Source: Perna viridis (lineage: Eukaryota). From it: a DNA stretch of 64,000 nucleotides. Location of the stretch: contig CM074519.1 in NCBI GenBank assembly GCA_037379345.1, positions 24,888,103 through 24,952,102 of the forward strand, read 5' to 3'. A program made the translations under genes and the position numbers. The notes beneath the pieces were generated by a model. The model searched no databases and was not told the DNA's origin. It saw only the letters and a program-made list of their open reading frames with translations. How positions within the stretch are numbered: the first letter of the stretch is position 1; every line of letters begins with the position of its first letter. Shown piece by piece: positions 23,992-48,812 of this stretch.

Positions 23992-24127
23992 GTGATAGAT
24001 CTGCTGAACACAAACCACAGACGATATTTAAATGTAAGATGGTCCAAGCACAAAGGATTCTACGTAGAAAATTTGTTTGTTGTAGAATGTGAAACTGTAG
24101 ATGATCTAATGGCTGTACTAGAAGAAG
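23992..24127 (+). CDS. KIF12: KIF12 exon 7 (VIDLLNTNHRRYLNVRWSKHKGFYVENLFVVECETVDDLMAVLEEG)
   Basis: ttttag| ... G|gtgagt, phase 1. DLL and KIF12-type VRW..KGFYVE.L. Confidence 0.95.
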
Positions 24128-27218: not shown

Positions 27219-28629
27219 ATGAATAAAACTAATAACAGTCGGCTTAACAAAACCAAACAGGGTAGTGGAACTGCTCATGGGAATACGTACAGTGGGAAAT
27301 ATCAAGCCAATAGACGTGATGCTCTGCAGAGTGCTAAAGTTCGTAATGGTGGGTCTGGAGCCTTTAGTAACGTAAACAAAGGGAGACCTTCTTCATTCAA
27401 TGACAGTGCATTACCTGATATTCATAAAGCAACTGATGGACCTTCATATCATCAGGGTGGCACCTCTTCCCGTAGAAATTCAGGAACTGGTAGTGTAAAT
27501 AGTTTTAAGCCAAAAGTATCGCCAGAACCACCAGGAAGACAAGCGATGAGTAATGATAGCGTAAAGAGGTCTCGGACTCCAAATATTTATTCTAGTCAAC
27601 AATACGGTGAAAACAGGTTTAGAAATAATGTACAACCTCATTATGCTGAGAATGACAATCCCAGAAATGGTAGAAATAATCAAAATGATTATTCAAGGGG
27701 AAATATACCCAATGGAGATATAAATAGGACACAAATGGACCAACAACAATACAACAGTTCTAATAGGCAGTACGATTACATGAAACCATTTGTTGGAACT
27801 TATCCTGATTCCCACATACCTCAAGGACATGGTCCTTCTAGTAATAGGGCCTATCAGAACTATAATGACCAATCTCAAAGTGGACCTTATACACAAGCTG
27901 GTGATTATCATAATCAAAGAAATTCAGTTGAACAGGAAACCAGAAGCCAACAGCCTACGCATCAACAACATGAGAACCATGGAGAATATTTTGATCGCAG
28001 GGATATGCAACCACCAGTTCAGCGGTCACCACGAAAACAGCCTGATAATCAGAGAACAAATGATTTCAGTGACCCAAGGAGGGGAAACTTTAGTGAAAGG
28101 AGTGGACCTCAGAGGCCAAATGGACCAATGGGGCCTCCACCAGGTAGAAATAATTTTGATATGAGTCCACCTGGTCCTCGTAAACCCCCATTCAAGAACA
28201 ATAACTCTAACACTCAACAGCAATCAGGTCAGACTAGCAGAAGTCCTTACAAAGATAGGGATGGGAATGTGCAATATGTGCTCCGTAATCGGAAGCCCTC
28301 GAATGATGATTTTGAAAGTCGGCAGTCGAGAATGAGTCAGGGTAATAGCAATTCTCAAACAGGCCAATCAGGTGCAAGAACACAAAACTCGAATGGAACT
28401 AAACCAAATTCTAAAGGTTATGAATTTCCAGAAGTGGCAGATGTTGACGATTTTGATATAAATGATATTGGTGCTGAATATGGCGGAAATGATATTTATT
28501 TGTGCTATCTTAAAACTGACGCAGGTGATGTTATAGGACCCCTAAGACTTGATATAGAGGATGTTCAATTGGGATTACCTAGATTTAAGCAGGAAAATAT
28601 TGACAATAAGGAACAAAATGAAGACCCAG
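27219..28629 (+). CDS. Large intronic coding exon (470 codons; N/Q/S/G/R/P-rich low-complexity region plus a short acidic/hydrophobic motif); probable alternative first exon of KIF12
   Basis: 487-codon ORF in AT-rich intron with higher GC. Donor CCAG|gtaaca at 28629/28630 is phase 1, in frame with exon 8 at 33475. Unspliced, the ORF stops at 28682. Confidence 0.75.
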
Positions 28630-29804
28630 GTAACACTCTGATACCCTTAGGATATAGAATTTACAGGCATAAAGTCCTGTAGTTCTTAGCTGCATGCCCA
28701 TGACTCTTACAGTCCTTATATTTTATTTTTGGATGGTCCAAAAAAAAACAATGTAAGGACCATAAGAGTTATGTTTCTGCTGCTACTATTAGGTTAAATA
28801 AAAATCCATAAAAATTTGGGATACCTTAAGCTTGATTCAAATTACAAACAGAAAAGAAATCTGCAGTCGAATAAAGAAACTAAAGAGAACAACATTAAAT
28901 GTTAGAAAGAACATGGTTACCTATGGTTACCAGATTTTCTTATTTTTTCTGTATTTGTTGGGTATTTTTTAAAAAAAAGATTTTATTATATATTTAGGTT
29001 TTAGTTGAATCTGAGTTGCTCTTTTATTCTTTATTTTCTGTGTTTATAGCTTTAGTTAATTTGTGTTGGCTAATTTGTGTTAATTAATTTATGTTAGTTA
29101 ATTTATGTTAGTTAACTTATATTAGTTAATTTGTGTTAATTATGGTGTTATGTCTGTTTTGTTGAAAATTTAGTGTTCATCCCATGATTATAAATATCTT
29201 GTTCTTCATTCTATTTATAGTTTCCTTGATTTTACCTTTATTTTATGTCATGTCGTAGGCACTCAAGGATTTAGTCATTATAACCTAGAAGACTTTGTTT
29301 TAAGTTCAGTTTAAAAGAATGAAAGTTACATGCTCCACTAAACATTTTTGGTGTCAAAAGGAATTCAAGATATGTCACATTTTTTTTTACATTTGATATC
29401 ACATTCTTGTCTTTAAGTTTCAATAGTTTTTAGCTGTTTGATTAGTAGTACAAATTTCCAATGCTCCTTTTAAGCTTCTGAAGTAGTTGAAAAAAGGGGG
29501 GATGTCAATATCTGGTTGATTTTGTATACTGGTATTTATTTTTTTTTTCATGGGAACATGCTTGAAATCCATTTATTTCAAAAGAGCTAGACCTTGAAAA
29601 AAGTAGAGTGTTGCATGATGTTTTCAGAGTTAGCACTTAAAACCCTCTAGCATCAAATAAAAAAAAACATTAAGGTATTAAAACTAATTTTTTTATCAAT
29701 ATATTGCATTATATGCATAATAGATTCAAGACTTAAATGGAATGATACAAAAACCTTTCTGGATTTTTAAAATTGTTCTGAAAAATAATCTAATATTTGA
29801 TGTA

Positions 29805-30241
29805 CCATGAAACCTGTCTAAACCAAACCCTGAATTATCTCAAAACCTGTTTAAACCAAACCCTGAATTATCTCGAAACCTGTCTAAACCAACTCTGAAT
29901 AATCACAAAACCTGTCAAAACCAGACATTTTTAAAAAGTCCCTAGAGTATCAGTTGAAATGTATTTTGCGCATTGGTACACTGAATATCTGTCTCAAGCT
30001 GTTTACTTATGCAGATTTTCAATATTTTCTACGAACTTTGACTGCTCAATTACACTCTATGAATTGTCAATATCTCCATAGTACCTTTGTTAAAATTTCA
30101 GTAAGTTCAGTATTTCAAGGATCATTTCCATAGAATACTGTGAAAAATATGGATTGTCATCAAGTACTATAAACAGATCTACTGTCTAATCCAAACTAAT
30201 TTTAAAGTCCAAAAAGGGTTTGTTCCAGACAGTTTTTACTG
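29805..30241. mobile_element. Degenerate copy of the same pogo-like MITE with a triplicated 34-bp subterminal unit
   Basis: aaacctgtctaaaccaaaccctgaattatctc tandem x3 at about 29810-29925. Right end ccagacagtttttactg|ta. Confidence 0.5.
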
Positions 30242-33001
30242 TATAAAAACATGATACTGAGGCTAAAACAATAAGCTCTCTTAAATGGCTTTACAAATAA
30301 ATCCTTGAGATTCAAGTCTTTTTAAAGATTAAAGTGAAGAAACTTTGTTTCAAGTGAAAACATAAAAAATGAGACTTTGTCACGAAAGTTTTCATTTATA
30401 TCAAAAAGATATTGATTCAGTTGAAATGAAATACAACTTCTACATGATGTTAATGATCATTTAATCAATAAACATTAAAAGTTATATATTTTATTGCACA
30501 TTTGAAAAGACCTAACAATTATGTCTATTTGCTAACCTGTGCTTGAGAGATCTATAATGGGGAATTATTGGAAAATTTATTATTAAGGTTTATGGGTGGA
30601 TGACAAACAAAAATGCTATTAATCAATGGTAATAATTATTTCATATTATGGAATTTGTTCACTTGCATGGATAATGCAGGTGTCGTGCATGTTAAATGTA
30701 GCCTGAACTATAGAAACATCAGATAATTCCGAAATTATTTATTCATGCACAACTAAAAAATTTGGAAACATTAAAACTTATTATTTGGTAAGGAAAACAA
30801 ACACCAAAGTTTCTGTTAACATGCTCTAAAAACTAGGGTTGGTAGTTAGGAAAAACATTTTTGCTCTAAAAATTAGGGTTGGTAGTTAGGCAAAACATTT
30901 TTGCTCTTTGCTCTAAAAAACTAGATTGGTAGTTAAGCAAAACATTTTATTTTTTAAAAGTTTTTGACTGTTTTGTTTTGTAGACACATTCAGACTTAAT
31001 TGGACTTGTCAAAAAATGGCTGAAACAACATTAGGATTGGCAAAACAATTAGAGTTGGTGGGGTTAGTTGAGACACTGGTATTTTTAGGCCTTTATCCAT
31101 TTACAGCTGAATAATTAATGTTTGCATGTTCTAGCCCTTAAGACATTGAATCACTCTTAAAGCGCTGTGTAGGCATCAGTACAGTCCTAATTTTGCTCAT
31201 ATTGACCACAGTTCCAAGTAAGCTCATACTAACATTAAAATTGCAGCAACTACAAAAAATATGATTGAAATCTTCTGGAAAAACTCATTTTAGTTGAATC
31301 TTCTATTGTGCACTTTATATCCTAATAAAGGGAGCAATTCATGTTTTCTCATTTGTTGCCTAACCCTCATAAACTGTTGTCTGCCGTTGAAGATTTACCG
31401 TGGTTTCATAGAGTTGAAATTTTCATGTCATAACAATTTAAAAATTAAATCTTTAGTGTTCCCTTGAGCTACTTGGAAACAGCAGGGTACTCCAGGTTTT
31501 TTTCCCAGGCCACTCTGGCAAGTTTGATGGCACATCATGTAAGCACTAACATCTATGTTAAAAAAAATTGACAGAGCACTTATAAAACCTCCTCTAAACC
31601 ATCAGTAGGGAACAGTAATGATGCCAAAAGGTCAATTAGGTCATTCATGGCAAAATTTGATTCGTACATTGTGAAATTAGTTGTAAAAGAACAACTCCTA
31701 GTTTCCAAATTAATAGTAGAAACTCAGAAACCTTGGATGTATACAAACATCTGTATGGGTTGTTGCTATATCCTTAATGTCTTTACAAAGTAACATATGA
31801 AAAATAACACATTAGAATTTAAAAGGAACAATTTCAAACTTTGTCATGGCTCATCAGAGCAGGAATATTTGTTTGACAAAATCTTTATGGGTTTAGTAAT
31901 ATTGAATTTAACAGCCAATTTATAATGTAGAGTAAATAAACCTTAAGAAGAGTTACATTTAAAAGAGATTGTGAGACTCATTGATCTAAGGTTTTGTCTA
32001 TTGACGAGGTTAAGCCCAATTGATCAGATCTTTGTTAATAAAACATTTTACATATCTTCATAAAACGATCAAGTGCAGAAATCTTGGGCATAGTTTTGAC
32101 AAGCGTTTTTTTGTTGTCGTTTTTTTTTTTTTTTTTAATTATTGTAGTTTGAAATATTTCGGTACAGATTGTTTTATGTTATTGAATTGCACTGGTGATA
32201 TAATTTGCTCTTTTGTGCACATTTGAAAATGGTTTTTAATTGTTATTACCATAAATAGAATCTTAACTATGAAGTGTTATTATAAATTACAAAGAAGGTA
32301 AATGAAAAAAAGTTTAAAGAATGAAAGTGAGACCATAGCTCACAAATGAAAATATAAGAATAAGGTAGATAAAATATTAGACATGAAGTGTATGAGATCA
32401 ACAACTTTATTACTTATTTGTAAGCTTTTATATACGTTTTCCACGGAACTTATGAAAATTACCTGCTATATTGTACTCAAACATGAGTTTAATATTTACA
32501 TTTGGTAAATAGGACTGTACTTTACACCTATACTTTTTCATGATTTAGGATGTTTGTCTAAGTTTGAAGCTATTTTATTTTTGCTCCTAATATTCTCTCA
32601 AACAATATTTTTATCATTACGAAATTTATTATTGCTAATTACTGTCATACTGTTTATACTGTTTAAATCAGCCATAATGAATTACTTACAAAAATAAGTT
32701 GTTAACAGTATACTGTGTTCACATATCTTTTTTACTGTGTTTTGAAATATTCAGAACATTTTGGTTCTGATTACCTTCTTTTATTTACTATTTTGACCAA
32801 TAGTACTGTAGTCCTTTTTCACAAAAAGTTGTAATAATTACAGCTCATACAGGGGTAATGTTCAGAGGATAAAGTAGCCTTCCACTGATGAGATCACAAA
32901 GAAGTAACTGCCTTAAGTATTTAACTTGACAATTGAGAAGGACATTTTAATTTCTATTAGGCAATTCAGTAGATTTTCAATAGTGCAGTCAACTAATTTA
33001 A

Positions 33002-33213
33002 GGAGGTAGACCTAGGGTAAGGGACATAACTCTTGAAATCAGTGATATGTTTGTATCATATTCAATTTCACCAAAGCCTATCAAGCTTTCATATGAAACA
33101 GAATAAAATCAGTTCAAGTTACTTCGATGCTTACATGAGATTGATGTAAAGTGCTGATTACAAACAATCCAATGACTTGTAAGAGTTGTGTCTCTTACCC
33201 TAAGTCTACCTCC
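33002..33213 (+). mobile_element. Same TTAA MITE, copy 2
   Basis: Colinear with 20586-20799, with TIRs and TTAA flanks. Confidence 0.85.
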
Positions 33214-33474
33214 TTAAGAAATCTGTTAGGTGGTTATCATTTAATCGTGGGAAGAGCAACTCTATCCCCTGAACATTATCATTGTTTGTGCTGTATATTA
33301 GTCATAAGAAATGGCATCAAAAATGAAAATAGCATGGTGTTGTTTTTACTTACAGCTGTCTGTGAAATAGGCCATTGATTACCTCTTCTATTGTAGAAAT
33401 AATCTCTTTGTGTCTTTTCCCACCAGATTTGTACTTTTTAAATTTGAAACATTGCTATTATTCATATTTTACAG

Positions 33475-33633
33475 GAATGAGAAATCGACAATCAGGATCA
33501 CATGGTCTTAATGAATTTTCTAGTCGAAGTCACAGTATGCTCACACTGACAGTTGATACTGAACAAGTTGACCCTGAGGATGAAAATTTGTACCTCACTA
33601 AAAGGGGAAAACTTACTTTTGTTGATTTAGCAG
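33475..33633 (+). CDS. KIF12: KIF12 exon 8 (switch I NEFSSRSH ... GKLTFVDLAG)
   Basis: ttacag| ... CAG|gtaagg, phase 1/1. N..SSRSH and DLAG motifs. Confidence 0.96.
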
Positions 33634-34576: not shown

Positions 34577-34660
34577 GAAGTGAAAAAGTTAAAGACTCTG
34601 GGTCCAGTGCTGAGATGCTGATAGAATCTAACAATATAAATAGAAGTCTATTAGTTTTAG
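34577..34660 (+). CDS. KIF12: KIF12 exon 9 (GSEKVKDSGSSAEMLIESNNINRSLLVLG)
   Basis: ttccag| ... TAG|gtaagg. Completes switch II DLAGSE and IN.SL. Confidence 0.95.
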
Positions 34661-37600
34661 GTAAGGCTTACCATTATCTTAGAAAAATCAATGATGTGAT
34701 ATTTAGCTCCAGGCTCAGCCTAATCCACTTTTTTGAAGGAGGGCATACTAGTAAATTCAATAAAAAAGCACATAATTTGCAATTTTCCATCTTCTTAAAT
34801 GAGTTTGTTTTTACAAAAATACCCTATTAGTCTTTCGTGCCCTTTACATAAAAATAAGTTTTTAAAAAGTATTGAATTATCTCTCCTTAACCTTCTATGT
34901 ATTACACATGCCAGTTGATACAATACTTAATTAATATCCTTATTGAAAGTTTTCTTGACCTTTGAAGTAACATAAAAATGATAAATTAAAGACCATATGA
35001 TCCATTTTTCTCTAAGGGACCTTTTTACTATAGTTCAATGTAAAATAAAAGCCCTACTTTCAAATTGATATCAATAGGTCAAGAAATTATGCTACTGCTT
35101 ATAATACTCATTATATTTAATTTAGGTTAGGCTTAATATGTAGAACATATTGAATGGTTTCATTAAATGTCAAACATACATTCTTTTAAATTTGATCAAA
35201 ATAATTCCATAAACAAATCTAAGACTGTATTCAAGATCTCCATCATTTCAGTACTCAGATGTATCGAGGAAGGATTTTGGAATTCAGATTCATATTTGTT
35301 CTGAAATCTGTTCTTTTAAATCACATGTAAATAGGTAATAATGTTAAACTTCACTTCCTGTTATACATGAACTAAAGACTTTTCATTTTGTACTTTTTAA
35401 ATTATCTCCCTTTGCCCATTTAAATATTTTTTTTTTCAAATTTGACACCTGTAATCGACATCATATTCCTAGGCTTACTTTCATGTTTATTGTTGGAGGT
35501 TAAAAAGACTTGACTAACGGCTTAGTATGATCACCTCAGTTTTATGTGTCAAATCATTTAAATTTACAGATTAAAAGCTGATGTCAATAAATCAAATAGA
35601 AATCTATTTTATGCCTAAGTATGATATAATTATCGTATTACTATCCGCTTTTGATGTCTCACTTTACCTTTGCCGATACCTGGGGATTGTATAAATACAT
35701 GAGTGCGTATCCTTACCAATTGTATCCTAACCAAAACTTTAATGTTTACCCTTTAGTGTAAAAGGTTGTTGAAACATTTTTATCAGCCCCTCTCATTTAC
35801 ACTCTTTTCACATTCCATTTCAGTCAAGAGAAGTCATTTGTCATTTAAATACATTAAAATATTGTAACTAAATGTAACTCCGTTATGATAAGAAAATCCG
35901 ATAGCTAGCCATTTTGTTTAATGTGCAGCCGGCTTATTTTCATGGAGGAAATTGATATTTTTGAATGGGATTGATGGAACAGGATTCTCTATAATAGATA
36001 TTTTGGATTTTAATTTGCTTTTTACACCTGGACAAAACATTAACGACAAGATGTGTTTTGAACTTTAACAAAGTAATCTTAAGGTAAGATTAGAGCTTAA
36101 TTCTCAGTTGGACCTAAGTTAATCAAATTGATTTTATTGTTTACATTTTTTCTTGGTATGATAAAGGAATATTAAATGAATTTCGTCAAATTACCGTTGT
36201 CCTTTAATTTTGTGTATTTGGGGATTTTAATTTTATGTTTGAGCATGCCTTGACCAGCTTATTTATATGTGTACACATTCCCTCTGTACATTGTTAACAT
36301 CAATTTGAACTATTTCTTTAGCATGAAAATAGGTACATTTTATAAAATTTTTCCTTTGATTTTTCTCTTTTGCTTGTACTCTACTCAAAGTGTCTTCAAA
36401 GATTTTGATATATCAGTCAGTCTTTCTGTCTGTCTTTCTGTCCGTCATAAGCTTTAGCATGCATGATTTGATCTACAAAAATTGAACCTTAATGTTAAAA
36501 TTGTGTTAATATACATAAAGGAAAGCTTTTTATTTGCAGAAAAAAAAATTAAGATACTTTAAAGTTCCAAAAATCTGTTGTGTATTCTTGAAAGTCCAAA
36601 AGCAAACCACTAAGTGCAATAATAATTTGTGATAGTACTGTAAGTTGTCATGCAAATACTTAAGTCTGAAATGTGCTTTTATTTTGTTTAAAATCAAATT
36701 TTTTATATGTAATGTAATCTGTCTAAACAAACCCTGAACTAACCTAACCAGAAACTTGTCTTAACCAAATTCAGTCTCTTTATATCATTTGGAATGTATC
36801 TTGGTAAGCTTAACATCAGTCAACAATAAACAATTGTACAGTCCAAAAACGGTCCCGAGAGGTTATACTGTATGTTTTTTGTGTAATCAAAGTAATTTAA
36901 TTAGAATATAGGTGGTTATTATAGGTTATATAGCTGAAAAAGGGACCATTTATTTCATGCTTATATATGTATAACTTGGGTTCAAGCCAAATAGCAACGA
37001 CTTGTGAAATTTGAAAGTAGAAAAGGTCTATTCACTTCACATTTTGTCCTATGCTTGCCAAATGAAACTTTAAGATTTGCCAAAAAATGAGAGAAAATTT
37101 AGTTGGGTCTCTCTGAATCATGAAAGTTTATGGTCTATACTGATATTAGGGTTGGAAGGGTTGTGATTTAGCTAAAGAATAAAACCAATTATTATTTTAG
37201 TGTGTTTCTTTACATTTTTACATTAGTCCTGTACTCCACATCAAAACTATAGATATAGTCTTTTAAAAGTGATTTTATTTTTATATTGAATATGGAGAGA
37301 ACACCTGTGAAATGGAATTTCCGGTCAACATGTGGAGTAAATTTTTGGTTGAAACTTAAAATCTATATGATATTGATACTTTATAACTTTCCATTAAAGA
37401 ACAAAAAGCCGTTTTTAAGAGGAAAACCCTAATGCATTTTTATGTATCAGTGTTTTATCAGTATTTGTTATAACAATATACATAAACTAAAAGCCACTTT
37501 TAAAGTCTTTTTGGCCCCCATGATGTGTCGCGAAGGGACATGGACATCTGTTTGTCTGTCCGTCTGTCCATCCACATTTTCCACACTTTTTTTTTGTAAT

Positions 37601-40600
37601 GCTTTGACCGAATAAGTTTGTTTTTCGGTATAAAACCTCATTATGAAGAGTTACAGATTAAGTTCGACTTTGGTTATGGTTGAATGTCTTTTTTAAATTG
37701 CCTTTTCTAGCCATTTACTTCTATATTTCAATTGCATATCCTTGTTTGAATAATATTCTTTTATCCAAAGGCCAGACTGTGCATGTACATGTAATATCTA
37801 AACTTTTCATAGTTTGTTTACAAGTTGTTTAAAGTGGCTGCTTTTATTTGGTAATTCTGTGAAGTTGTAAGTACTTGGTACAGTATTTATTATTATATCG
37901 ATGAAGTCTTAAATATTTTAGGCTAACAGCTGTCTTAATTGATTTGATGTAAGATCCATTTGTACAATTTCTTAAAGATAAAACTACTTTAAGCATTTAT
38001 TTGTATAATTCATTCCAAAAGTATGTATTAAAAAATTGGAATTTCCATTATTTGTATCCAGTAAGGTTTTGCCTATGTACCTGCCTTGAGATTTTTTATT
38101 GTAAAGTATGATAGGTATCCCAAATGCATTCAGGGGAGAAAATGTCAAATATGGCAAATACTCATCCAATATATGTATAGGCCTGGCTTTGTCTAGTCCA
38201 ATAATGGAAACCTACATTGAAGTGGTAAATAAAAGTAGAATTGCACGAGGTTTTCCATTTTGAAGATATTATTTGCGCCTCAGTCCAATTTAGTAAACCT
38301 TACACAATAAGGCTATATTTTTTTTTGTTTTGGAGTGTCTGGTTTATTTTGTAGGTAATGAGTGATATTTTTTTTCATTTTTTTTTGTCATTTTAATGCC
38401 GATGGCTTTGTTTTGTGCTTTGAACTCTTCTTTTTTTTACATAAAGTCAATAATTCTAGCTAGCATTAAAAATGAATTAGGACAGACACTCAATGGCATG
38501 CCCTAACTGACCACTATCCCTGTTATGTCCCACTTACTGTTCAAAAATTTAACTGTTCCCTTGACATTTCTTCAATTATTTGAATAGACCCTTTCCATTG
38601 GTAAATCATTAGGCTTAAATATTGCCTTTCCAACTGTGTATTTACGTCAGTCCAAGTCTGGAGATTCTCTCTGATAATCACCAGTAAATCTCTTGCTTAA
38701 AAAAAAAAATCCACCCAAGTTAGCATTTAAGGCCATTCAAAGTTAATTTTGTGATTCTCAGGCTGAGGAAACATTTTGTTGTTTAACTTTTTTAGTGCAC
38801 AAAAGGGGTGATCAGTGTTATATCTGTCACAGCTCATACAAATATGAAGGTGCTTTTTCTGTTTCTAGTTTATTTTTAATGCAATGAAAATATATAATGA
38901 GGTATCATTTACAGAGATGTAAGACAGTATGAAAATATGGCCTTAGAAACAAGAAATAAATTTTAGTTGGCCTATTTCACTTGATTTTGTTGTGTAGAAA
39001 CTTATTCTTGTTTAATCCTGAGAGATCAGTCAAGTGTTTGACGATATTTATAGTTGGATTTTCAAATGCTTACCAAGGAGATCTTACCGGAATTAGTAAA
39101 GATGCACTGTTGAGTTCAGTGAAACTTGGCATGTACTTTTAAAGTACTCATGATCATTGGCACATGTTCATCTTTCCTGTTAAAATGTTTTTGTTTTTTA
39201 TATTATTTAGGCTAAAGGTTATTGGAAATATATGGCTAATATTTAAGCTGTTTTAAATATGAAAATACCAGTTTTCATGAAAAATTTATGCGTTTTTGCT
39301 TTTTTTTGCAATGTAGTTGTCCAAATTTTAGTAAGGTCACATGGTATAAAGTTGGTTTAGGAATAAATCTATAAGTATATAGACTTTGATAATTAGATTT
39401 AATCCTATTGGTATACAACAGAAGGATTTACCTCAGCTGAAGAAGTCCTTATGAACCACAAGACAAACATATGTCATGTTTGATTGTTTAATATTAAACA
39501 AAGTAGATCTATTTATACTAATAAGTCAAAGGTCAATATTGAATTAGGTTAAGTCTATGTGTGAAGGATTGTCAAATTTGCCAATGATTTTATGCTTTTA
39601 CTGTTTAGGAACGTACAAAAAAAAGGGTCAAGATTTTAGGTGAAATTTTCTACTACTGACCTGTGTCCTTTATTTTAACCATTTTACCAAATTGGAACTT
39701 CCAGGAACATGATTTATGTCACAGAATGACTTCATTTTCTGCTAAAGTTTATAATGTCAAGTTCAAGAATGGTTGGGACCTGTATTTGTACAGACAGCAC
39801 CTTGGTTCGACTTGTCAAATATCATTTTTTCTTTGGTGAAGCTTTATCCACTGTGCCACCTTTGAAAGTTTAAAATCACAGATTGCCTTAAAAAATTAAA
39901 GAATGTAGAAATATGTAGCATAGGTATTGCCTGCTTATCCATATTTAATCCTCTTTAACTCATGGTAATTCTGTTGTTGCCTGCAAATAAACTTAGTTTT
40001 GGGCATTGAAAAGTCACAAAAACATTAGGTTGGCTAGGATGGGGAATTCATAAAATAAAAATTATTATTCTAATATAAATCCCTGTATACAATGCAGTGA
40101 CATGTGGATTAAGTATAAAATTTCTATCATTATAATGACTTACATCTTGCACCTGTATCAAGCTGTCCTGCATTTTGTTTGTCCATTTTTTTATTGCCTA
40201 TAAATTTTGGGTTAAATCTGGTTTTATGATCTATTTTCAAAAATCATATAAGTGTCATTGGAATAACTTGTACAGAGTAAACAGATCATGTTTCATTGAG
40301 GATAAACGTGAACGAGAAAGAAATCATACAATACTTCACTTCATTTTGCATACAATTCACATCATGCTATACATTAGATTACACTGTAGTAAGAATTAAC
40401 AGGTGTGTATTTCTATATTTTGTGGGAAACTCTACTTCAGTGTAAGATTGTTAATTCAAGGAAGATATATTATTCATTCATGGTGTACAATGTAAGTTTT
40501 ATTCTGTATAGGAGTTCTAGTTGGTACTAGATTCAGGGGTGGATCCAGGATTTGAGTTTAGGGGGGTGCGTAAATAGAATTAAATGCCATGCAAGGCAAG

Positions 40601-41116
40601 GCAAAAAATATTATGGGGTGAAAGTTGTGGTGAAAATTATTTTCTTAGTGATTTAGTTGGGGGGGGGTGGGGGGTGGGGGGTGTATGTCCGGTACGCCAA
40701 TCCTTTGAATCGTGCCTGGGATTTTAACAAGAATTAGAATTACTACTAGGACAAGTCGGAATGTGTACTAGTACATGTAGTGGGATACTTAAAACTACTT
40801 ACAATGTGCACTGTAACATATCAGGTGTTAGGAAAGAAGTTTATATTTTTTTTAGCATTTTCAAAAATGCATGTATTTAAAATTTTATTGGCGATTTTTA
40901 ACATCCTCTTAAGTACTTTACAACTTTGATGGGTTGCTTTCAGCTATGGTGTATCCAATTGTCATTAGTCTTTTTAAGTCTAATGCAATTTTTAACCTCT
41001 AAATTTCAAATTATGATGTATAGTCATAGAAATCAGAAATATCTGCCAAAGGATGTCAAGCCATAATCAGTCAACCATGTTTAATTTCGCATTATCATAT
41101 TGATGTCTATTTGCAG

Positions 41117-41235
41117 GTAATTGTATATCATCATTAGGAGATCCTAAGAAAAGACAAGGACATATACCATACAGAGACAGTAAATTGACCAAGTTATTAG
41201 CTGACAGTTTAGGTGGAAATGGTGTAACTTTGATG
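41117..41235 (+). CDS. KIF12: KIF12 exon 10 ([39 protein letters not shown])
   Basis: ttgcag| ... ATG|gtaggt. Microtubule-binding [10 protein letters not shown] motif. Confidence 0.96.
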
Positions 41236-44200
41236 GTAGGTACACATCCTCTCAAATTGGCTGTAGAATTGTTGCCAATTACTGGATAAATAAATCTTAA
41301 ATTCAGAATTCGGGCCAGGTACTGTTGGACAAATCCTGGCAGCAAACGTGAAATTGACCTGTGTTGGTAGGGCAAATCCCTACAGACCTTAAATTAGCCT
41401 GATCAGTTGCTTGTTGAAAAAGATTAAGAACCACAAAATAACAATATGTTTAAGATGTGGTTGCCGAGTGTAGTACTTACCCAGTAAATTACAGTTTCTG
41501 ACAATATTAGTGGTTCGTACCAAGCCTACTATATCTAGAAGCCAAGAACATGTTTTGGTCAGGGATTTCACAGATTTTCAACAAAGAATATCAGGATTTT
41601 GTCCTCAGCACCTAACTCTAGTGACTGTCTGACATCCATATTGTCAAACGTTGTTGTTGAAATGTTGAAGGTTTTTATTCACCAACTTGTTAAGGATGAA
41701 CAGAACTCTACCAAAAATTTAGACAAGTAGCTGCAAGTTTTTTTATGTTTTTGATTAGCAGTTTAACCATGGCTATAAATCCCCCTTTTTAAATCTCTCA
41801 ACTTCTCTTTTTGTATACTGCAGCTGTATATGTCAATATTAATACTGAATTATTGTCTCAATTGTGTACCGTTCTGATCAAGCCAGGTCGAGCAATATGT
41901 TTTTGCATTAATTATTTCTGTTTATCCATATATGGTGATGAAGATACTGATAGTGTACTACAGTTTCCAAGCAAAATGCAGTGAAGCATTTGTTTTTCTC
42001 AATAAGCCATCTAAAGAATTAGTGGGCTAGAAAAGAAACATCGTCAGATGACAACAGTTAACTCTTTAAATTATTGTTTATTGATCTCGTTGTCTCATGG
42101 TTTAAATTTTAAAGACTTGTTGCTACGACAAAGTTGGGAAAATAACTTTCTGCAAAACAAACTCAGTTTCCATTTGGCATTAATGATTTAAATGTTGAAT
42201 GTTTACTTTTTTTATTCTTTGATTTAGATCTTTTGTTTTTATTGATTAGAGTTAATTGTTTTTAAGAAATTAGGCTTTTCTTTGTTATTTTTCACTCAAG
42301 AGTCATACATGTACCAACATTTTAAAAAGGTTCTCACAAAATTTTTGATTGATATTTTAATCTAACATGTTTAACTGGTCGCTTCCTGGATTGCTTTTTA
42401 AAATAGTTGCTTCTTTGTCTTAGTAAGGTACCGATACATGTAAATCATATATTTTTACACGTAAGGCCATGCTAAAAAGGCAATTTGTATTTGTTTTTAA
42501 AGGCATATGTGAAGTGGATTTGTGTTTCCTGTGTTGGTTCAGTGGAAAACAAAATCTGTTCAATAGTCTGAATTTAATTTTCTCATTGTTAAGGGCATAA
42601 AATATCTGTCAATCAATGTTAAATATTATTCAATCAATCAATCAATTTTTAAAAACCATTTTTGAACAAAGCCACCAGTTTAACAACCTGATACACTAGG
42701 AGAAACATTTTGATGATTTAATGATTCAGTTTAAAGGTTATGACTCAAAAAATATATTAGCTCATGGCCTTGTGCACTTTAAGATCATGGTTTCCTCTTA
42801 GTAAGACTGTCATGAATAAAAATTGAACGAGTTTTTAACTAAAAAACAAGCCTGCTGCAGACTAGTTCATTATTTTATTTCTGGTTCACCCGCTAGCATA
42901 CAAACTCCATATTGTTGTTAAATACTTAAGTTGCTCAATTCATAATTGATCATTTGAAAGATTTGACATTTTAGAAAATCAATCACATGTTAGAGAACAT
43001 TATTTTGCTCTTAAGGAACTTGTCTATCTAAAGATCAGGCAGAAATTAAATATAAGAATATTCTTTGGCAAGTTTGGTTAGATTTATCAGTTGATGAAAA
43101 AAAAAGACCCTATGATAATACTGGAAGAAAAAGCGTAGACAAAAATATTTTCTTTTCATCTAAAACATTATTTAAACTTTTAGTAAAACTCTTTTAAACA
43201 AAAACTAACATATTAATGGGGACTTGAAAGAAGTTAAGTCATGAATCCATTACATATTCCACAGTTAATCTATGAATTTTTATTTGTAGTACAACTAAAT
43301 TATCTCCCTTTAAAAGTATTTTTTTTGTTGTGTAAGATTGTCTCCCTTTAGATATGTTTTATCTTGTAATGAGTCTGATACAGGCAAATTGACATCAAAG
43401 AAGATAAGAAATATTGCATGCTTACAATTATCCCATATTTTAAATGACTTTAAATCCCTTTTCATTTGTTTGCCTGTCATTTGTACCACATGAAAAAAAA
43501 AGTTTATCCAGTTAAAAATGTTTCAAGTTCTTAGAACTTGCATGACACTAATCTAGGTGTGTAACTTTGACAGGAAATTAGTTTAAAAAAAGAATTTGTT
43601 GTATTATCCATATGAATTATGCATGCATCAATCATAACTTATTTTTCTGCCACTGAGTTGAAACTGAAGTTAATTTTCATATCTGAAGGCTACATTGGTG
43701 TTATGGAGATGTGAATTCAAATATTATTTTAAAACATGACATTTTGGTCTTGAAGCACATATATTCTGAAAATCAGTAGAATATCTGTCTTTTCAAAGTC
43801 AACTTTGTTTTAATTTGGAAAAAACCTTGTGTCTAGCTGACATTATTTACTTCTAACTTTAAAAATCCTTTTGGATTGGACATCATGTAACACGAGAAAG
43901 AATTTTGCATATGTGATCAATATTATTAAATTCCAAGGAGGTTTGGTAGATAGTGAAACTGAGTTGTCCTCAACAAACTTTTTGTTTTCCAACCCTTTAT
44001 ACATTGCGTGCCTCTAAGACTGGAATATTTTCTTCACTTCTCTGTAAAGGAATGAACAGTCAATACTGAAAAACTGTGGATCCTATTCAAATTTGGAGCT
44101 ATTTAATTGATTCAAAGTTCTGTATATAAGAACCTACAAAATTGATTCTTTTTTTCTCTTCTAATGATGTTTACTTTTGATATAATACATATGGAAGGAA

Positions 44201-44749
44201 ATTGAATATTTACTTCGTAGAAGACCATTAGTGGATATTTAAAATAACTGTTTTTTATCATGACTGCAATATCTCTTGTTATAAATGGAAAATAGGTCAC
44301 CAACCAAAATTCCTATACCTGTAAGTTAATTTTGTGCTGTTTTGGTAGACTTTGTTCAATTTTACTAATTCTGAGTAATCTATGAACCTGAATTCTGAAG
44401 TACCACTCCATCTAAAAATCATGTAGTAGGTGATTCATAAGTGAATAGATCACATATTTTTTTTCATTTTATCATGTTTCAGAATATTTAAGTTCCTTAA
44501 TGGTTTCAATTGTATCTTCAAGTCTTCAAATGGTGTGAAGACAATCAAAAGAATACATCATAATTTTGCGTTATAGGGAGATAACTTTTATTTTGTAAGC
44601 ATATTCAATTCAAGACTAGCTATTTTAAGAAAATTTCTTTTAAAATAGCAGCAGTGATGAATAAATTGTATTTAGATAAAACAAAATATGTATGCTTTCA
44701 TTTGAATAGTAGTTCTTCATTCCTTAACTCTTAGCATTTTTTTTTACAG

Positions 44750-44854
44750 ATTGCATGTGTGACTCCATCTGCTTACCATGTGCATGAAACAACGAACACA
44801 TTACGATACGCCAGCAGAGCCAAGAGAATTAAAAGTAAACCTGTTGTCAAAATG
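44750..44854 (+). CDS. KIF12: KIF12 exon 11 (IACVTPSAYHVHETTNTLRYASRAKRIKSKPVVKM; motor end/neck linker)
   Basis: ttacag| ... ATG|gtaggt. ET..TLRYA.RAK.I motif. Confidence 0.96.
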
Positions 44855-45229
44855 GTAGGTCTTACACACCTTGATGAAAAAATTGCATTAATACTTTCAA
44901 AAATCAAATTACATTATAAAGAGAATAGGTATGGTGTATATGTCAAGAGAGAGAAACCCCAAATAATTCCAAACTATATAAGGCTTTGATGAAGGGACAA
45001 ATCTTAATTTTGACTTAAATCTATCAGTAATTAATAAGAAGAAGTGTTTTTATTTTTAAACCAAGTTATGCTTGTATGACCAACTATTGGGCATTTTATG
45101 CTTGTTTATAAACGCTAAGCAGTACTTGACGCATAACTACCCCTAAGTTGGTAATTTTGCATAACCTGGTCAAAAATTCAAAACTTTCCTTAAATAAATA
45201 TATGTATATCAATTCAATATCTATTACAG

Positions 45230-45398
45230 GATCCAAGAGAAAAACTGATTTTGAGTTTGAAAAGAGAGCTTAAAGTATTAAGAAATGAGAATCACTATTT
45301 ACGGGAACAGTTGGAATTTCCAGCTAAACCGAAAGGAGATTTACAGAAAAATAATGATGAAAAATTTATGAAAATGGTTAAGGATATGCAGTCAAAAG
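45230..45398 (+). CDS. KIF12: KIF12 exon 12 (DPREKLILSLKRELKVLRNENHYLREQL... neck coiled coil)
   Basis: ttacag| ... AAAG|gtaatg. Heptad pattern, phase 0/1. Confidence 0.92.
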
Positions 45399-45585
45399 GT
45401 AATGGTTTAACATTGTTAATTACATATTCTGAATATGTTGACAATTTTGAAAATTATCATGTTGAAGTCAGAAATGACAAACATTGAACATGTTATAATT
45501 TCAGAACTTACAACGTACATTATCGCTGTACTGTTATATAAAAGACCAACTCAACATTTACTTCCTTTCTGGAAAGGTTCATTTA

Positions 45586-45762
45586 CACTTAAACCTCTCT
45601 AAACTGAACCCCTTTCGGACTGCAGAATTTGGTTGGTTTGGACAGGTGTACGATTTGTCCAGGTTCAAAATACATTTTAACTGACATAATGGGACTTCAA
45701 AATTTGTCTGGTTTAGGCAGGTATTTGGATTATTCAGGGTTTTGTTTAGACAGGTTTCACTG
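45586..45762. mobile_element. TA-flanked pogo/Tc1-mariner-like MITE
   Basis: Right end GTTTAGACAGGTTTCACTG|ta, degenerate left end ta|CACTTAAACCTCTCTAAAC. Relatives near 29805, 36715, 47255 and 52980. Confidence 0.6.
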
Positions 45763-46112
45763 TATATTTAGGTCAGCTGAGGTAATAGATCTGAGAAATT
45801 GCAATGGGAACAAAGAGAACAGAATATGTCTAAGAATTTGATAGTGAAGCATTAAGATGGCTTTTATATTCTGAGACATATCTCCTAGCTGATTAACTTT
45901 TAAGTGTGCTAATGTTCATAAGTTTTTAAAATCTGTCTAGTTTAGAACCATAAAAAAAGATTAATTTCCAGGTAAATTTAAGAAAAAATGGTGAATGTGA
46001 AATTGGTCTGTTACATATCAGTGTGAACCGTTTGGTTGTTATATTGAGGAAAATATAAATAAAAAAAAAAAAAAAACAAGTGTTGATAGAGGGATTATTA
46101 ATAATCTTTCAG

Positions 46113-46154
46113 AGGTAAAGCCTACAAAACCAAGAAAAGTTTCTTCAAAAACAG
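46113..46154 (+). CDS. KIF12: Candidate 42-nt basic cassette exon (EVKPTKPRKVSSKT)
   Basis: tctttcag| ... ACAG|gtatta, phase 1/1, stop-free, frame-preserving. Confidence 0.55.
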
Positions 46155-47115
46155 GTATTAGTGAACCTTATCCCGATAACCATCACATAGTGTATGACAT
46201 TTTCCTGTTTTTACTGTGTTAATAAAAATTGCAGCAATCAAATAGTATTTCTTTTGAATACAATGTGAACTTGTATATTTTCCCTCCTTTATGATTTTTC
46301 CCCAATAACCTTAATGTTAACCGTACTGTAATTAAATAAAATGATAATTTTTCATGTCTTGTACCTCATGAATTTCTTCCTAAAGTGTAATAAACCCTTC
46401 TGGTATATGTCATTTTTAATCATTCTAACATTTCCCCCTTTTTTTGTATTTTTGAACTAAATTTTTATTAAACACTATTTTCCTTCAAATCAAATCAATA
46501 GGTTATCACTGTTTTCTCACAAATATAAGGTTATCATCAATTGCCTCTAAGTCACAAACACTCCAGAGCAAACAGGTATATTATTCTCACATGTGTTAAT
46601 GACCTTGAGTCTTAAATTTTACCTGCTTAAAGCCCATAATTTGTTTTAGAAAACCTTTCTTTAAATGTTTCCTGGACTAAATTGCATTGAGTTGGCAAAA
46701 TCTCTTTTCTTTCTGCCTTTCTGTGTTGATACATTCCTTGAAACATTAATATTTTAGCGTTTGTGCATCCTTTATGGTGCATTTACACATCATTTTGCAT
46801 TCGTTTATACCCAAGATACAAGCGTTTGTTTATTTTTGTACTTTGATTATTTCCTTGATTCAACTGTTATTTTATATTTTTTGCTATTATTAATTTATAT
46901 AATTTTATTTTCCCTTTTTTCTGTCGTCATTATTTATCGATATTACTATTTTTCATCGTTCGTCTATCATGCGTTTAAATGCACGCTAGGAATGTTCATT
47001 TATCGTGCGTTTGGGTATCATGTGTGCCGGAAACCTAAACATCTCAAGGAGTGTATGATAATCTCCATATTTCACTATTACCCTTCGTTCATTTGGTTAT
47101 TTTTTCTGTTTACAG

Positions 47116-47182
47116 CCAGTCCCGGAGACCGTGATCTATATGCCATGTTACAAGAATATATGATAGAAAATGAAGCATTAAG
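47116..47182 (+). CDS. KIF12: KIF12 exon 13 (ASPGDRDLYAMLQEYMIENEALR)
   Basis: ttacag| ... AAG|gtaaac. KIF12-type LY.MLQE.M.ENE.LR motif. Confidence 0.93.
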
Positions 47183-47722
47183 GTAAACATAGAATGAGTC
47201 TCAACATACAATGAGTCTAGTGAATGAATATAACAATTTTCAATAAATGTATATAGTGAAACCTGACTGAATGAAAGCATTTAAGCTGGAATGTTTTATT
47301 CTCTTTGTACAGTTATTTGGTTTAAACAAGTTAAGAATGCATAGGAACTGTCATGAATAAACAGAGCCCAGAATAAACTGAGGCCAGAATGAACTGAGCC
47401 CAGAATGAACCAGAAATCTATCTAAATACAACATCTAATGAACTCTGTATCGGTTTCTAGTACAAACTGAAGTACTTATCTCATCTGACAAAATTCTACC
47501 GTCATAGATGGGTTCTTTGCTGTACATGTACTCAATAAATGAAATAGCTCTGGTAGTTTGTTTTTTCATTATTAACTTTAACCACTTTTCACATAATTGT
47601 GGCTTAAAAGTATGCTTACAGTAGCACCTTTTTAAATCATGTCTTATTTAAGTATCCATCATGCAGGTTCTTGAATTCTTGGCTGCAAATTAGTCAAGTT
47701 ATGTGTTGTTTTTATTTTTCAG

Positions 47723-47830
47723 GAATGAGAATTCAGAGTTACATCGCAACAAAGATCAAATGCACAGAGACCAACAGTCTCTATCTAAACAAAATGAGAG
47801 ACTCTCAAAGAAATTTGATGACATGCAAAA
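47723..47830 (+). CDS. KIF12: KIF12 exon 14 (NENSELHRNKDQMHRDQQSLSKQNERLSKKFDDMQK; coiled coil)
   Basis: tttcag| ... AA|gtaaga, phase 2/2. Confidence 0.9.
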
Positions 47831-48137
47831 GTAAGATAAAAAAAATTATTGTACCTTTGATTTTGCAAAACAGAAGTTAACCAGGAGTTATTTCAGTTTC
47901 TTCAAGGTCTTGTCACTTTACCTTCATATGTGTGGATCTTTTGCGCTTTATTGATAATCCCTGATATTGAATATGTTGGTGCACCCTTTTTATACATGTG
48001 TGTATTTTTATAAACTGATATTTATCAGTACCAAGTTAAAACAATGCTTTTATTGCTTTCTTTTAATTAAAGTTTACATTTTTAGTCTAATTTTTTTTTA
48101 AATTGTGCTTTTACAATATTTCATGGTTTTGTTTTAG

Positions 48138-48243
48138 AACTCTGGACAAAGTTCGACATAATGGCAGTGAGCCAGGAGTACAGTACAGATCACCACAGGG
48201 CAGTGGTAACCCAGGATATGCCCCTCCTCCTCAACGTCTTCCT
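48138..48243 (+). CDS. KIF12: KIF12 exon 15 (TLDKVRHNGSEPGVQYRSPQGSGNPGYAPPPQRLP); alternative donor at 48306
   Basis: ttttag| ... CCT|gtaagt, phase 2/0. Confidence 0.85.
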
Positions 48244-48812
48244 GTAAGTATCAGTTATGTAAAGGGGGCTAAACCTGGTTACTACATTCCTCCCAAACAT
48301 TCATATGTAAGTATCATTGAGTTAGTCCAGGGAGATAACTCAATTCTAGAAATTGAATCATTGTGTTTTAGTGATGTGGAAACTTTGTTTTCCTTTTGGT
48401 TTCTTTCTTTTTAAGATGAAGGAGAAAATGGCCTAATTCAACAAATGAAAGCTCTTTATTTAGATCTAATTTTAAATTTGAGGTTTTAGGCCATTTTATA
48501 TTTTCTTAGTTTCATATGTCAGGAGGTGAATTCCTCAGCACTTGCTATGAGTTGAAAATAATTAGGTTTTTTATTTTAGAAGACAATTATGACTGAAATA
48601 GAGAAAGTAGATAATCAATAAAATTCATTGAAGTACGAACAGGTTGATTCTAGTTTAAAATTATAAAATGTATAAAAAATTAAATGAGGTAATGCTTTTT
48701 TTTAACCAAATACTGACTACAGTTGTTGCTATATACTGTTATATAATCAAGGGAGATTAAATGCTTAATTTTTTTACTTCAGTTGTTGAATACATGCTCC
48801 ATTTCTTTCCAG

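What the first reader, a model, noticed from the sequence alone, without database searches (positions are those of the whole stretch)
27219..33633. Hidden 1.4-kb exon inside the motor domain predicts a P-loop-less 'half-motor' KIF12 with a prion-like N-terminus
Seen: a 487-codon ATG-initiated ORF, by far the longest in the window, lies in the intron between motor exons 7 and 8. Its donor CCAG|gtaaca (28629) has the same phase as exon 7's donor, so ...NEDP-G-MRNRQSGSHGLNEFSSRSH reads through in frame. An in-frame TAA lies just upstream (27201-27203) and there is no good pyrimidine-tract acceptor, which favours an alternative first exon. The predicted protein of about 907 aa lacks the P-loop, so it cannot bind ATP normally (established kinesin structure). 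It keeps switch I/II, the alpha4/L12/alpha5 microtubule-binding face, the neck coiled coil and the tail. Inference: one gene may encode both a motor and a catalytically dead partner, which could heterodimerise with or inhibit the motor, or tether condensates to microtubules.
Basis: partly seen in the sequence, partly recalled or inferred. Interest (0 to 1): 0.9.

Follow-up and report, generated by a model that had tools for sequence, protein, structure and literature searches.

The report
Conserved half-motor KIF12 isoform exon
A long coding exon inside an intron of a mussel-like kinesin (KIF12) gene is transcribed and spliced so that a disordered region replaces the ATP-binding half of the motor; many molluscs and an acorn worm keep the same arrangement, but its function is untested.

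Summary
A 487-codon ATG ORF (27219-28682) lies between motor exon 7 (23992-24127) and exon 8 (33475-33633). It is far longer than chance allows and is single-copy in the genome.

Contigs from three separate studies carry the GT..AG joint 28629|33475, and depth falls to zero just past the donor.

The exon is under purifying selection (dN/dS 0.25-0.31). RefSeq models in Mytilus, oysters, scallops, clams, unionids and gastropods show the same layout: a disordered region, a ~35-residue hairpin motif, then only the C-terminal ~45% of the motor. So does the hemichordate Ptychodera flava. The exon is therefore real and old. It already sits in databases as "uncharacterized protein", and I found no paper on it.

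Not supported:
- "Prion-like": N+Q is 23%, charged residues are 22%, and the composition is not conserved.
- The idea that the motif patches the fold: AlphaFold2 confidence is low and there is no significant similarity to the lost half.

The transcription start was not mapped, and the function is inferred only. The closest analogue is headless Myo10.

Verdict: a real, conserved alternative 5' coding exon that gives a P-loop-less KIF12 isoform.

The parts
27219..28629 (+). Alternative 5' coding exon: ATG plus 470 codons plus the first base of a split Gly codon. It encodes a ~400-aa disordered region and then the conserved motif.
   Evidence: ORF; spliced joint in X1, X3 and X7; dN/dS 0.25-0.31; colinear with the N-terminal 470 aa of M. 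edulis RefSeq isoform X3, P0074
27085..27218 (+). Conserved non-coding stretch just upstream of the ATG (5' UTR and/or promoter). It includes the invariant ACCTG..TTTAAA.TCCCAGGTAAA at about 27180-27205 and an in-frame TAA at 27201-27203.
   Evidence: Alignment of four mytilid sequences, 74% mean column identity; sequence. Role not determined.
28476..28580 (+). Conserved ~35-residue motif (ORF residues 420-454), pattern EYxGxDxY-x-[CF]-Y-[LM]-x-T-x-x-G-x3-GP-x-[RK]-[LF]-D-[IV]-x-[DN]-x3-GLP. Predicted to form a beta-hairpin.
   Evidence: Alignments; HMM hits of 48-78 bits in 71 of the fetched proteins carrying the alternative region (molluscs plus unnamed contigs), 19.9 bits in Ptychodera at the expected place, and no hit in the ~95 canonical KIF12 proteins; AF2 hairpin pLDDT ~70
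28269..28289 (+). Second short conserved island, VQYV[IL]R[NS] (ORF residues 351-357)
   Evidence: Present in mytilids, and visible in the sequences of Pecten, Ostrea, Tegillarca, Mya, Haliotis and Physella
27762..27815 (+). Conserved island NRQYDYMKPFVGTYPDSH (ORF residues 182-199); invariant among the mytilid sequences
28630..33474 (+). Intron removed from the alternative transcript (GT..AG, 4845 bases). Holds repeat copies at about 29640-30240 and 32997-33220.
   Evidence: Joint 'skips 4845, GT..AG (cut +3)' in three runs; depth 0 at 28640-28839
33475..33633 (+). Exon 8, shared by both isoforms: G-MRNRQSGSHGLNEFSSRSH (switch I) through ..FVDLAG (start of switch II). Corresponds to Pfam Kinesin positions ~176-235.
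   Evidence: The exon-8 contigs start at 33473 in all three runs, which is where the assembly graph branches between two upstream exons that both end in AG.
23992..24127 (+). Exon 7 of the canonical motor (beta5/alpha3, ..DDLMAVLEEG). It is the alternative upstream partner of exon 8 and has the same phase.
9973..10047 (+). P-loop exon (GQTGSGKT). Canonical isoform only; absent from the alternative product.
34577..52710 (+). Shared downstream exons 9-19. Boundaries are approximate, from tblastn: ~34577-34662, 41107-41241, 44744-~44850, 45230-45403, 47115-47183, 47718-47840, 48133-48243, 48813-48929, 49116-49202, 52168-52221, 52570-52710. They encode SE of switch II, alpha4, [10 protein letters not shown] (L12/alpha5), the neck, the coiled coil and the tail.

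Best explanation
The ORF is an alternative 5' coding exon of the KIF12 orthologue, lying in the intron between motor exons 7 and 8.

Shown: transcripts that carry it splice from 28629 to exon 8 at 33475. Translation from the conserved ATG at 27219 would give a protein of about 907 aa. In that protein the first ~55% of the motor domain (beta1-beta5, alpha1-alpha3, the P-loop) is replaced by a ~400-aa disordered polar region, which ends in a conserved ~35-residue hairpin motif. The product keeps switch I, switch II, alpha4/L12/alpha5, the neck, the coiled coil and the tail. This isoform is conserved across bivalves and gastropods and occurs in a hemichordate, so it probably predates the protostome-deuterostome split. 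In the runs examined it is a minor form, with word depth about 12-20% of the exon-8 contigs, and it is absent from one RNA run that does express exon 8.

Inferred: without the P-loop and half of the core sheet it cannot work as an ATPase motor. It most likely acts as a non-motile partner, competitor or adaptor. It would share the stalk and tail (dimerisation, cargo and regulator binding) with full-length KIF12, and perhaps its residual microtubule-binding elements. The new N-terminal region and its conserved short motifs would recruit other partners. This is the role hypothesised for headless Myo10. I put that functional part at about 0.4.
For: Splicing and expression:
- The spliced joint, GT..AG, occurs in one contig each of X1, X3 and X7, which come from three studies. 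Depths are 12.5, 7.8 and 13.7, against 104, 46 and 67 for the exon-8 contigs.
- There is no depth at 28640-28839.
- X21 raw RNA reads cover exon 8 but not the ORF exon.
- The ORF has one genomic locus, so the joined form is not a retrocopy.

Selection:
- dN/dS is 0.31 at dS 0.17, and 0.25-0.29 against the window.
- Conserved islands and the conserved start are seen.
- The 5' flank is conserved.

Same architecture elsewhere:
- The alternative region is followed by Pfam Kinesin positions ~182-327 only, in Pecten, Tegillarca, Mya, Haliotis, Gigantopelta, Ostrea, Batillaria and Biomphalaria.
- It also occurs in Mytilus edulis and M. californianus, Mizuhopecten, Crassostrea, Saccostrea, Potamilus, Sinanodonta, Bulinus, Physella and Ptychodera flava.
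- The motif HMM hits Ptychodera at the expected position. It hits no canonical KIF12.

Gene identity: the canonical orthologues are named KIF12 by their sources, and they map exon by exon onto the window.
Against: - No single contig or read shows the whole 907-aa reading frame. The contigs stop 31 bases into exon 8, at the graph branch.
- The transcription start is unmapped. The conserved CCCAG|GTAAA 19 bases before the ATG could be an acceptor for an unseen upstream exon.
- X1, X3 and X7 are only guessed to be RNA by the tool. The guess rests on the spliced joint, the empty intron bins and their 60-100 Mb of contigs.
- Unspliced contigs also exist (L001, L004).
- There is no protein-level evidence.
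- AlphaFold2 gives the half-motor only pLDDT <50 with 21 sequences and 50-73 with 80 sequences. Foldseek TM to kinesins is 0.2-0.28. It may therefore not fold as a motor-like domain at all.
- All function is inference.
Confidence: 0.8

Rival explanations
1. The ORF is an independent intronless gene nested in the kinesin intron. It encodes the 487-aa protein, which ends at the read-through stop at 28680-28682, and is not joined to kinesin exons.
For: Contigs L001 (27001-28747) and L004 (26766-29204) are colinear with the genome across the donor. Homologues P0002-P0005 and P0010 also read through the donor, giving G|GTAAG.. = 'GK..'.
Against: - Those contigs may be genomic DNA or pre-mRNA. L002 comes from a metagenome.
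- Three runs show the spliced joint and zero depth just after the donor.
- The read-through tails differ between relatives.
- The donor position, its phase and the Gly codon are conserved from molluscs to a hemichordate.
- NCBI models in over 15 species join the exon to the half-motor.
Confidence: 0.04
2. The exon is an internal cassette ('poison') exon included after exon 7, using CCCAG|G at 27199/27200 as the acceptor. Inclusion brings a stop codon (TAG at 27212-27214 in the exon-7 frame), so the transcripts would down-regulate KIF12 rather than encode a new protein.
For: TCCCAGGTAAA is invariant upstream of the ATG in four mytilid sequences. The 5' ends of the spliced contigs were not seen. 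One metagenome contig, L008, begins exactly at GTAAA.
Against: - A 470-codon frame kept open with dN/dS ~0.3, a conserved initiator Met and N-terminal residues, and a conserved C-terminal motif would not be expected of a poison exon.
- The 5' extents of the three spliced contigs differ: 148, 346 and 493 bases before the ATG, if colinear. They do not stop at a fixed ~31 bases as they do at the 3' branch, which argues against a shared upstream exon.
- The polypyrimidine tract is poor.
- NCBI models start at this Met.
Confidence: 0.08
3. The transcript is real but the product is non-functional: transcriptional or splicing noise from a cryptic intronic promoter.
For: Depth is low relative to exon 8, and the exon is absent from run X21. 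The half-motor is not confidently folded by AlphaFold2.
Against: Purifying selection acts on the exon. The architecture and motif are conserved across bivalves, gastropods and a hemichordate.
Confidence: 0.03

Closest known systems
NCBI-predicted half-motor products of the KIF12 locus in other molluscs. Examples: Mytilus edulis 'uncharacterized protein isoform X3' (P0074, 880 aa), M. californianus 'homeobox protein 2-like isoform X2' (P0069), Pecten maximus 'KIN-14R isoform X4' (XP_033747894, P0012), Ostrea edulis LOC125672587, Haliotis rufescens LOC124140214.
   Same: Same order of parts: a disordered N-terminal region, the VQYV[IL]R island, the hairpin motif, an acidic linker, then G|[ML]RNRQTGSHGLNEFSSRSH and the rest of KIF12. 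P0074 is colinear with the whole window exon.
   Different: Only 41-49% identity in the disordered part. The linker ranges from 0 to over 50 residues, and the N-terminal region from ~150 to over 1100 residues. Some species have extra 5' exons. All are automatic models with misleading names, and none has been studied.
Headless Myo10 (mouse myosin-X; PMC5725431, which cites Sousa 2006 and Raines 2012)
   Same: An alternative start inside an intron of the motor-coding part is spliced to the shared downstream exons. The product lacks most of the nucleotide-binding head and is otherwise identical. It is tissue-restricted and is hypothesised to be a natural dominant negative or scaffold.
   Different: It is a myosin, not a kinesin. 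The headless-specific exon is entirely 5' UTR, whereas here the exon adds 470 codons with conserved motifs. Here about 45% of the motor domain is retained. The function here is untested.
Canonical KIF12 (kinesin-16 family in the standard nomenclature, from my own knowledge)
   Same: Same gene. Exons 8-19 are shared. The motor exons are 75-100% identical to M. edulis KIF12, with the N-terminal extension exon at about 41%.
   Different: The canonical form has exons 1-7, including RVRP, the P-loop and beta4-alpha3. The alternative form has none of these.
VAB-8S / VAB-8L of C. elegans (KIF26-like)
   Same: One gene gives a long form with a kinesin-like motor and a short form without it. This is from my own knowledge; the paper read here only confirms that the two forms exist.
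   Different: VAB-8S, as I recall, lacks the whole motor domain and has no large isoform-specific coding exon. The details were not checked here.

Membership tests
Kinesin motor domain (Pfam PF00225) | N1 P-loop GxxxxGK[ST] | tested here: not met
   For the alternative isoform: the only P-loop (GQTGSGKT) is in exon 5 at 9973-10047, upstream of the alternative exon. Homologous half-motor proteins match only Pfam positions ~182-327 of 327. The canonical isoform of the same gene meets this feature.
Kinesin motor domain (Pfam PF00225) | Switch I (NxxSSRSH) and switch II (DLAGSE) | tested here: met
   LNEFSSRSH and ..FVDLAG are in exon 8. SEKV is at the start of exon 9.
Kinesin motor domain (Pfam PF00225) | Microtubule-binding elements alpha4 / L12 / alpha5 ([10 protein letters not shown]) | tested here: met
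   NINRSLLVLG is in exon 9 and [20 protein letters not shown] in exon 10, at 41107-41241.
Kinesin motor domain (Pfam PF00225) | Complete alpha/beta core able to fold | tested here: inconclusive
   AF2 of the Biomphalaria half-motor protein P0029 gives kinesin-like secondary structure, but pLDDT is below 50 (21 sequences) or 50-73 (80 sequences). Foldseek TM to kinesins is 0.2-0.28 at 6-13 A rmsd. No full-length control was run at equal alignment depth.
KIF12 orthologue group | Closest relatives are KIF12 across animals | tested here: met
   The best matches to the shared part are proteins their sources name KIF12, in molluscs, amphioxus, ticks, cnidarians and tunicates. M. edulis KIF12 maps on all exons. 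No phylogeny against other kinesin families was made.
'Headless' motor isoforms from an internal start | Isoform-specific 5' exon inside the motor-coding part, spliced to the shared downstream exons | tested here: met
   Joint 28629|33475 in three runs.
'Headless' motor isoforms from an internal start | Own transcription start (internal promoter) | tested here: inconclusive
   The 5' flank is conserved and spliced contigs reach 148-493 bases upstream of the ATG, if colinear. The start itself was not seen, because the one reads call had to cover the junction.
'Headless' motor isoforms from an internal start | Antagonises or scaffolds the full-length motor | not testable with these tools
Needs experiments.
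Prion-like / QN-rich domain | High N+Q, few charged residues, composition conserved | tested here: not met
   Residues 1-400: N+Q 23%, K+R+D+E 22%, net charge +24. The best 60-residue window has 38% N+Q. N+Q is 10-20% in the orthologous regions of other species. No dedicated predictor was available.

The most novel reading that the evidence does not exclude
The hairpin motif together with the C-terminal half of the motor forms a new nucleotide-independent microtubule- or tubulin-binding module. KIF12 loci would then have encoded, since before the protostome-deuterostome split, both a motor and a non-motor microtubule-associated protein that tunes or opposes it. This kind of kinesin-derived regulator has not been described.
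Probability: 0.2. Interest if true: 0.8.

Novelty: new variant of a known kind. Interest (0 to 1): 0.6.

Why it matters
Kinesin genes are normally treated as encoding motors. Here one locus also makes a form that cannot be a motor, and selection has kept that form, with its own motifs, across molluscs and in a hemichordate.

If it regulates or competes with KIF12, it would be a kinesin counterpart of headless Myo10. It would also offer a ready-made natural tool for studying what half a motor domain can do.

Practically, automatic names such as 'homeobox protein 2-like', 'trichohyalin-like' and 'KIN-14R' for these products are misleading. Some annotations also split the gene in two at this exon.

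Tried and rejected
- Pfam on the ORF and on its ordered end: nothing, apart from a sub-threshold ANXA2R match.
- Transposon or retrocopy: rejected, single locus.
- Homology of the motif to the lost motor half: not shown. BLAST placed it on beta4/beta5b, MAFFT on the beta5 hairpin, and hhalign on beta3/P-loop. The hhalign score of 18.6 is only about the 96th percentile of column-shuffled controls. A motif HMM hits no canonical KIF12.
- 'Patch' idea: two AlphaFold2 runs gave a moderately confident hairpin at best, and no confident docking. The second alignment is biased, because MAFFT laid canonical beta5 under the motif.
- ESM Atlas: the first try met a busy machine. The motif region of P0074 gave no usable hit.
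- Complex prediction for the shared stalk was not available and nothing was folded.
- Transcription start from other contigs: L007 is a chimeric or palindromic metagenome contig, and L008 starts 20 bases before the ATG. Neither is informative.
- The older M. edulis assembly shows three frame changes in the exon. The newer RefSeq model P0074 is uninterrupted, so I read those changes as assembly errors.
- Search for further deuterostome carriers with the Ptychodera region found only its own isoforms. This is word-limited, so it is no evidence of absence.
- Literature: four searches found nothing on this isoform.
Natural database proteins served as proxies.
Full report
**1. Observation**

The window holds an ATG ORF at 27219-28682 on the + strand, 487 aa long. 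It is by far the longest in 64 kb; the next longest is 159 aa. Stops occur at 0.068 per codon, so the chance of 487 open codons is about 1e-15. Shuffled windows never exceed 138 codons. GC rises to 0.36-0.43 over the ORF, against 0.25-0.31 on either side.

The surrounding gene is a kinesin. Its P-loop exon (GQTGSGKT) is at 9973-10047. Exon 7 is at 23992-24127, with acceptor ..TTTTAG|GTG and donor GAAG|GTGAGT. Exon 8 is at 33475-33633 and holds [35 protein letters not shown] is in the exon at 41107-41241.

The ORF's donor CCAG|GTAACA (last exon base 28629) has the same phase as exon 7's donor. Either upstream exon therefore completes the same Gly codon with the first two bases of exon 8. A TAA at 27201-27203 closes the frame upstream.

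**2. Is it used?**

Twenty public runs of the same organism, from six studies, hold the stretch. I laid four runs on 27640-33639, the 6-kb limit, chosen to span the predicted junction.

- One contig each in X1, X3 and X7 (three different studies) carries a joint that skips 4845 bases with GT..AG ends. This is exactly 28629|33475.
- Each of these contigs stops 31 bases into exon 8.
- The exon-8 contigs begin at 33473 in all three runs. That is what an assembly graph does where two upstream exons that both end in AG converge on one exon.
- Depth is 12.5, 7.8 and 13.7 on the ORF exon, and 0 in the bin just after the donor. It is 104, 46 and 67 on the exon-8 contigs.
- The tool only guesses that these runs are RNA. 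The spliced joint, the mostly empty intron bins and their 60-100 Mb of contigs (for a 723-Mb genome) support that guess.
- The ORF has a single genomic locus, so the joined form is not a DNA retrocopy.
- In the one run kept as raw stranded RNA reads (X21), exon 8 is covered on the expected strand but the ORF exon has no reads. Use of the exon is therefore regulated.

Two Logan contigs (L001, L004) are colinear with the genome across the donor. Their library type is unknown, and they may be DNA or pre-mRNA.

**3. Is it coding and conserved?**

- A word-based search found 41-42% identical proteins of 448-536 aa on short contigs, and a Mytilus edulis 'KIF12' model that joins the exon to MRNRQTGSH...
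- The alignment shows a conserved start (MNK..N.R), several invariant islands (RPSSF; KPKVSPEP; NRQYDYMKPFVGTYPDSH; VQYV.RN) and a nearly invariant C-terminal block.
- dN/dS is 0.31 between two close relatives (dS 0.17) and 0.25-0.29 against the window.
- About 135 bases upstream of the ATG also align among four mytilid sequences. They include an invariant ACCTG..TTTAAA.TCCCAGGTAAA, and each sequence has an in-frame stop before the ATG.

**4. How far does it reach?**

A profile of the exon, searched against 1.84 billion representative proteins, gave 29 hits. Many are 860-1431-aa proteins in which the C-terminal block of the exon is followed directly by Pfam Kinesin positions ~182-327 only. Their sources name them as Pecten maximus, Tegillarca granosa, Mya arenaria, Haliotis rufescens and H. 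cracherodii, Gigantopelta aegis, Ostrea edulis, Batillaria, Biomphalaria and Nucella.

A second search added Mytilus edulis (isoform X3, 880 aa), M. californianus, Mizuhopecten, Crassostrea virginica and C. angulata, Saccostrea, Potamilus, Sinanodonta, Bulinus, Physella and Haliotis asinina. It also added the hemichordate Ptychodera flava. The M. edulis RefSeq protein is colinear with the whole window exon, 47% identical and without interruption.

In Ptychodera, the half-motor form (P0126) and the canonical form (P0144) share the exon-8 equivalent and diverge at the same Gly. P0126 carries EVYYCWAKTESGEITGPFKLELGDLQ where molluscs have DIYLCYLKTDAGDVIGPLRLDIEDVQ.

An HMM built from the molluscan motif alone scores Ptychodera at 19.9 bits, at exactly that position. 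That is E = 0.03 with the database size set to one million. The same HMM gives no hit at all in the ~95 canonical KIF12 proteins. The isoform is therefore old, probably older than the protostome-deuterostome split, though convergence cannot be excluded from one deuterostome.

**5. What the product looks like**

The N-terminal 400 residues are polar and poor in hydrophobic residues: N 13%, S 12%, Q 10%, R 9.5%, G 9%, P 9%, and ILVMFWC together 10%. They carry 22% charged residues and a net charge of +24. N+Q is 23% here but only ~10% in Haliotis and Ptychodera. 'Disordered with short conserved motifs' is a fair description. 'Prion-like' is not supported.

The conserved ~35-residue block (window 28476-28580) is predicted as a beta-hairpin with pLDDT about 70. 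That run used an alignment of 21 half-motor proteins only.

The retained half of the motor shows kinesin-like secondary structure. Its confidence is low: below 50 with 21 sequences and 50-73 with 80 sequences. The model superposes poorly on solved kinesins, with TM 0.2-0.28. The neck and stalk helices are confident, above 90. No full-length control was run at the same depth, so the low confidence is only suggestive that half a motor core does not fold by itself.

I tested whether the motif is a diverged copy of a lost motor segment. Three methods put it on three different segments, and the best profile-profile score lies inside the shuffled distribution. Neither that homology nor the 'patch' idea of a neighbouring first-stage note is supported.

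**6. Mechanism**

*Shown:* there is an alternative 5' coding exon. It is spliced to exon 8. It is under purifying selection. The architecture is conserved. The P-loop and all of beta1-alpha3 are lost, while switch I, switch II, alpha4/L12/alpha5, the neck, the stalk and the tail are kept.

*From established kinesin structure:* without the P-loop and half of the core sheet there is no normal nucleotide pocket, so the product cannot step.

*Inferred (about 0.4):* it acts through the parts it shares with KIF12, namely stalk-mediated pairing and tail partners. It would be a non-motile partner, competitor or adaptor, and its disordered region and short motifs would bring in other proteins.

The closest studied analogue is headless Myo10. 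That isoform is made from alternative starts in intron 19 spliced to exons 20-41. It lacks most of the motor, is tissue-restricted, and is hypothesised to be a natural dominant negative or scaffold. The difference is that its specific exon is all 5' UTR, whereas this exon adds 470 codons with conserved motifs.

**7. Rivals**

- *Nested unspliced gene:* contradicted by the joint and by the zero depth after the donor.
- *Stop-carrying cassette exon after exon 7:* cannot be excluded for some transcripts. The 5' ends were not seen, and CCCAG|GTAAA before the ATG is invariant. It does not, however, explain a selected 470-codon frame with a conserved start.
- *Noise:* contradicted by the conservation.

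**8. Novelty**

The isoform is already modelled by NCBI's pipeline in many species under uninformative or misleading names. 'Hidden' is therefore true only of this window. Four full-text searches found no paper that describes it. I rate it a new variant of a known kind, a truncated motor isoform made from an internal 5' exon. It has moderate to high interest because of its depth of conservation and its own conserved motifs.

**9. Limits**

- The transcription start was not mapped.
- No single molecule spans the whole frame.
- There is no protein evidence.
- The runs' RNA status is inferred.
- The tools never named the organism. Its exons are 75-100% identical to Mytilus edulis KIF12, so I call it mussel-like.
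- The earlier first-stage notes on this window gave the motif and the composition as leads. I tested both here.

Noticed in passing
window 32997-33220: A ~220-bp repeat with ~60-base terminal inverted arms, MITE-like. The first look found over 3500 candidate copies in the genome, and the 40 scored were 90-94% identical. RNA contig depth is in the tens of thousands, with many different flanks. There is a sub-threshold Rfam match to MIR7996 (31.5 bits against a gathering score of 119).
   Followed up: partly
window 29640-30240: A second stretch of the same intron with high, patchy RNA depth (up to ~570) and many odd joints to the 33.0-kb repeat. Most likely another repeat family; not characterised.
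   Followed up: no
window 27180-27205: ACCTG..TTTAAA.TCCCAGGTAAA is invariant among four mytilid sequences, 14-39 bases before the ATG. That is better conserved than much of the coding exon. It could be a core-promoter element, a UTR element or a splice acceptor.
   Followed up: partly
L006 (Mytilus edulis GCA_905397895.1) 10001-11401: The older M. edulis assembly has three frame changes inside the homologous exon. Its annotation splits the locus into an N-terminal half-motor gene (306 aa) and a 441-aa 'KIF12' model with invented introns. The newer RefSeq protein is uninterrupted, so these are probably assembly errors.
   Followed up: partly
window 4440-4844: The first coding exon of the canonical gene (135-aa ORF, S/T/P-rich N-terminal extension) matches M. 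galloprovincialis isoform P0110 but is missing from M. edulis isoform P0109. The canonical motor therefore also has alternative N-termini.
   Followed up: no
P0005 versus P0002 (relatives of the exon): One relative lacks 72 residues from the middle of the disordered region that its near-identical neighbour has. This could be an allele, or an intron inside the exon.
   Followed up: no
L007 (JGI metagenome contig) 1-700: A contig with inverted duplicated pieces of the exon and its upstream region. Looks like an assembly chimera.
   Followed up: no
P0124 (metaclust, 1006 aa) residues 216-235: A protein of unknown taxon with a partial motif (DDGDLIGPFRLDVDESELG) placed directly before GLRNRQVGAHNLNETSSRSH. 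It may mark the isoform in a further animal group.
   Followed up: no
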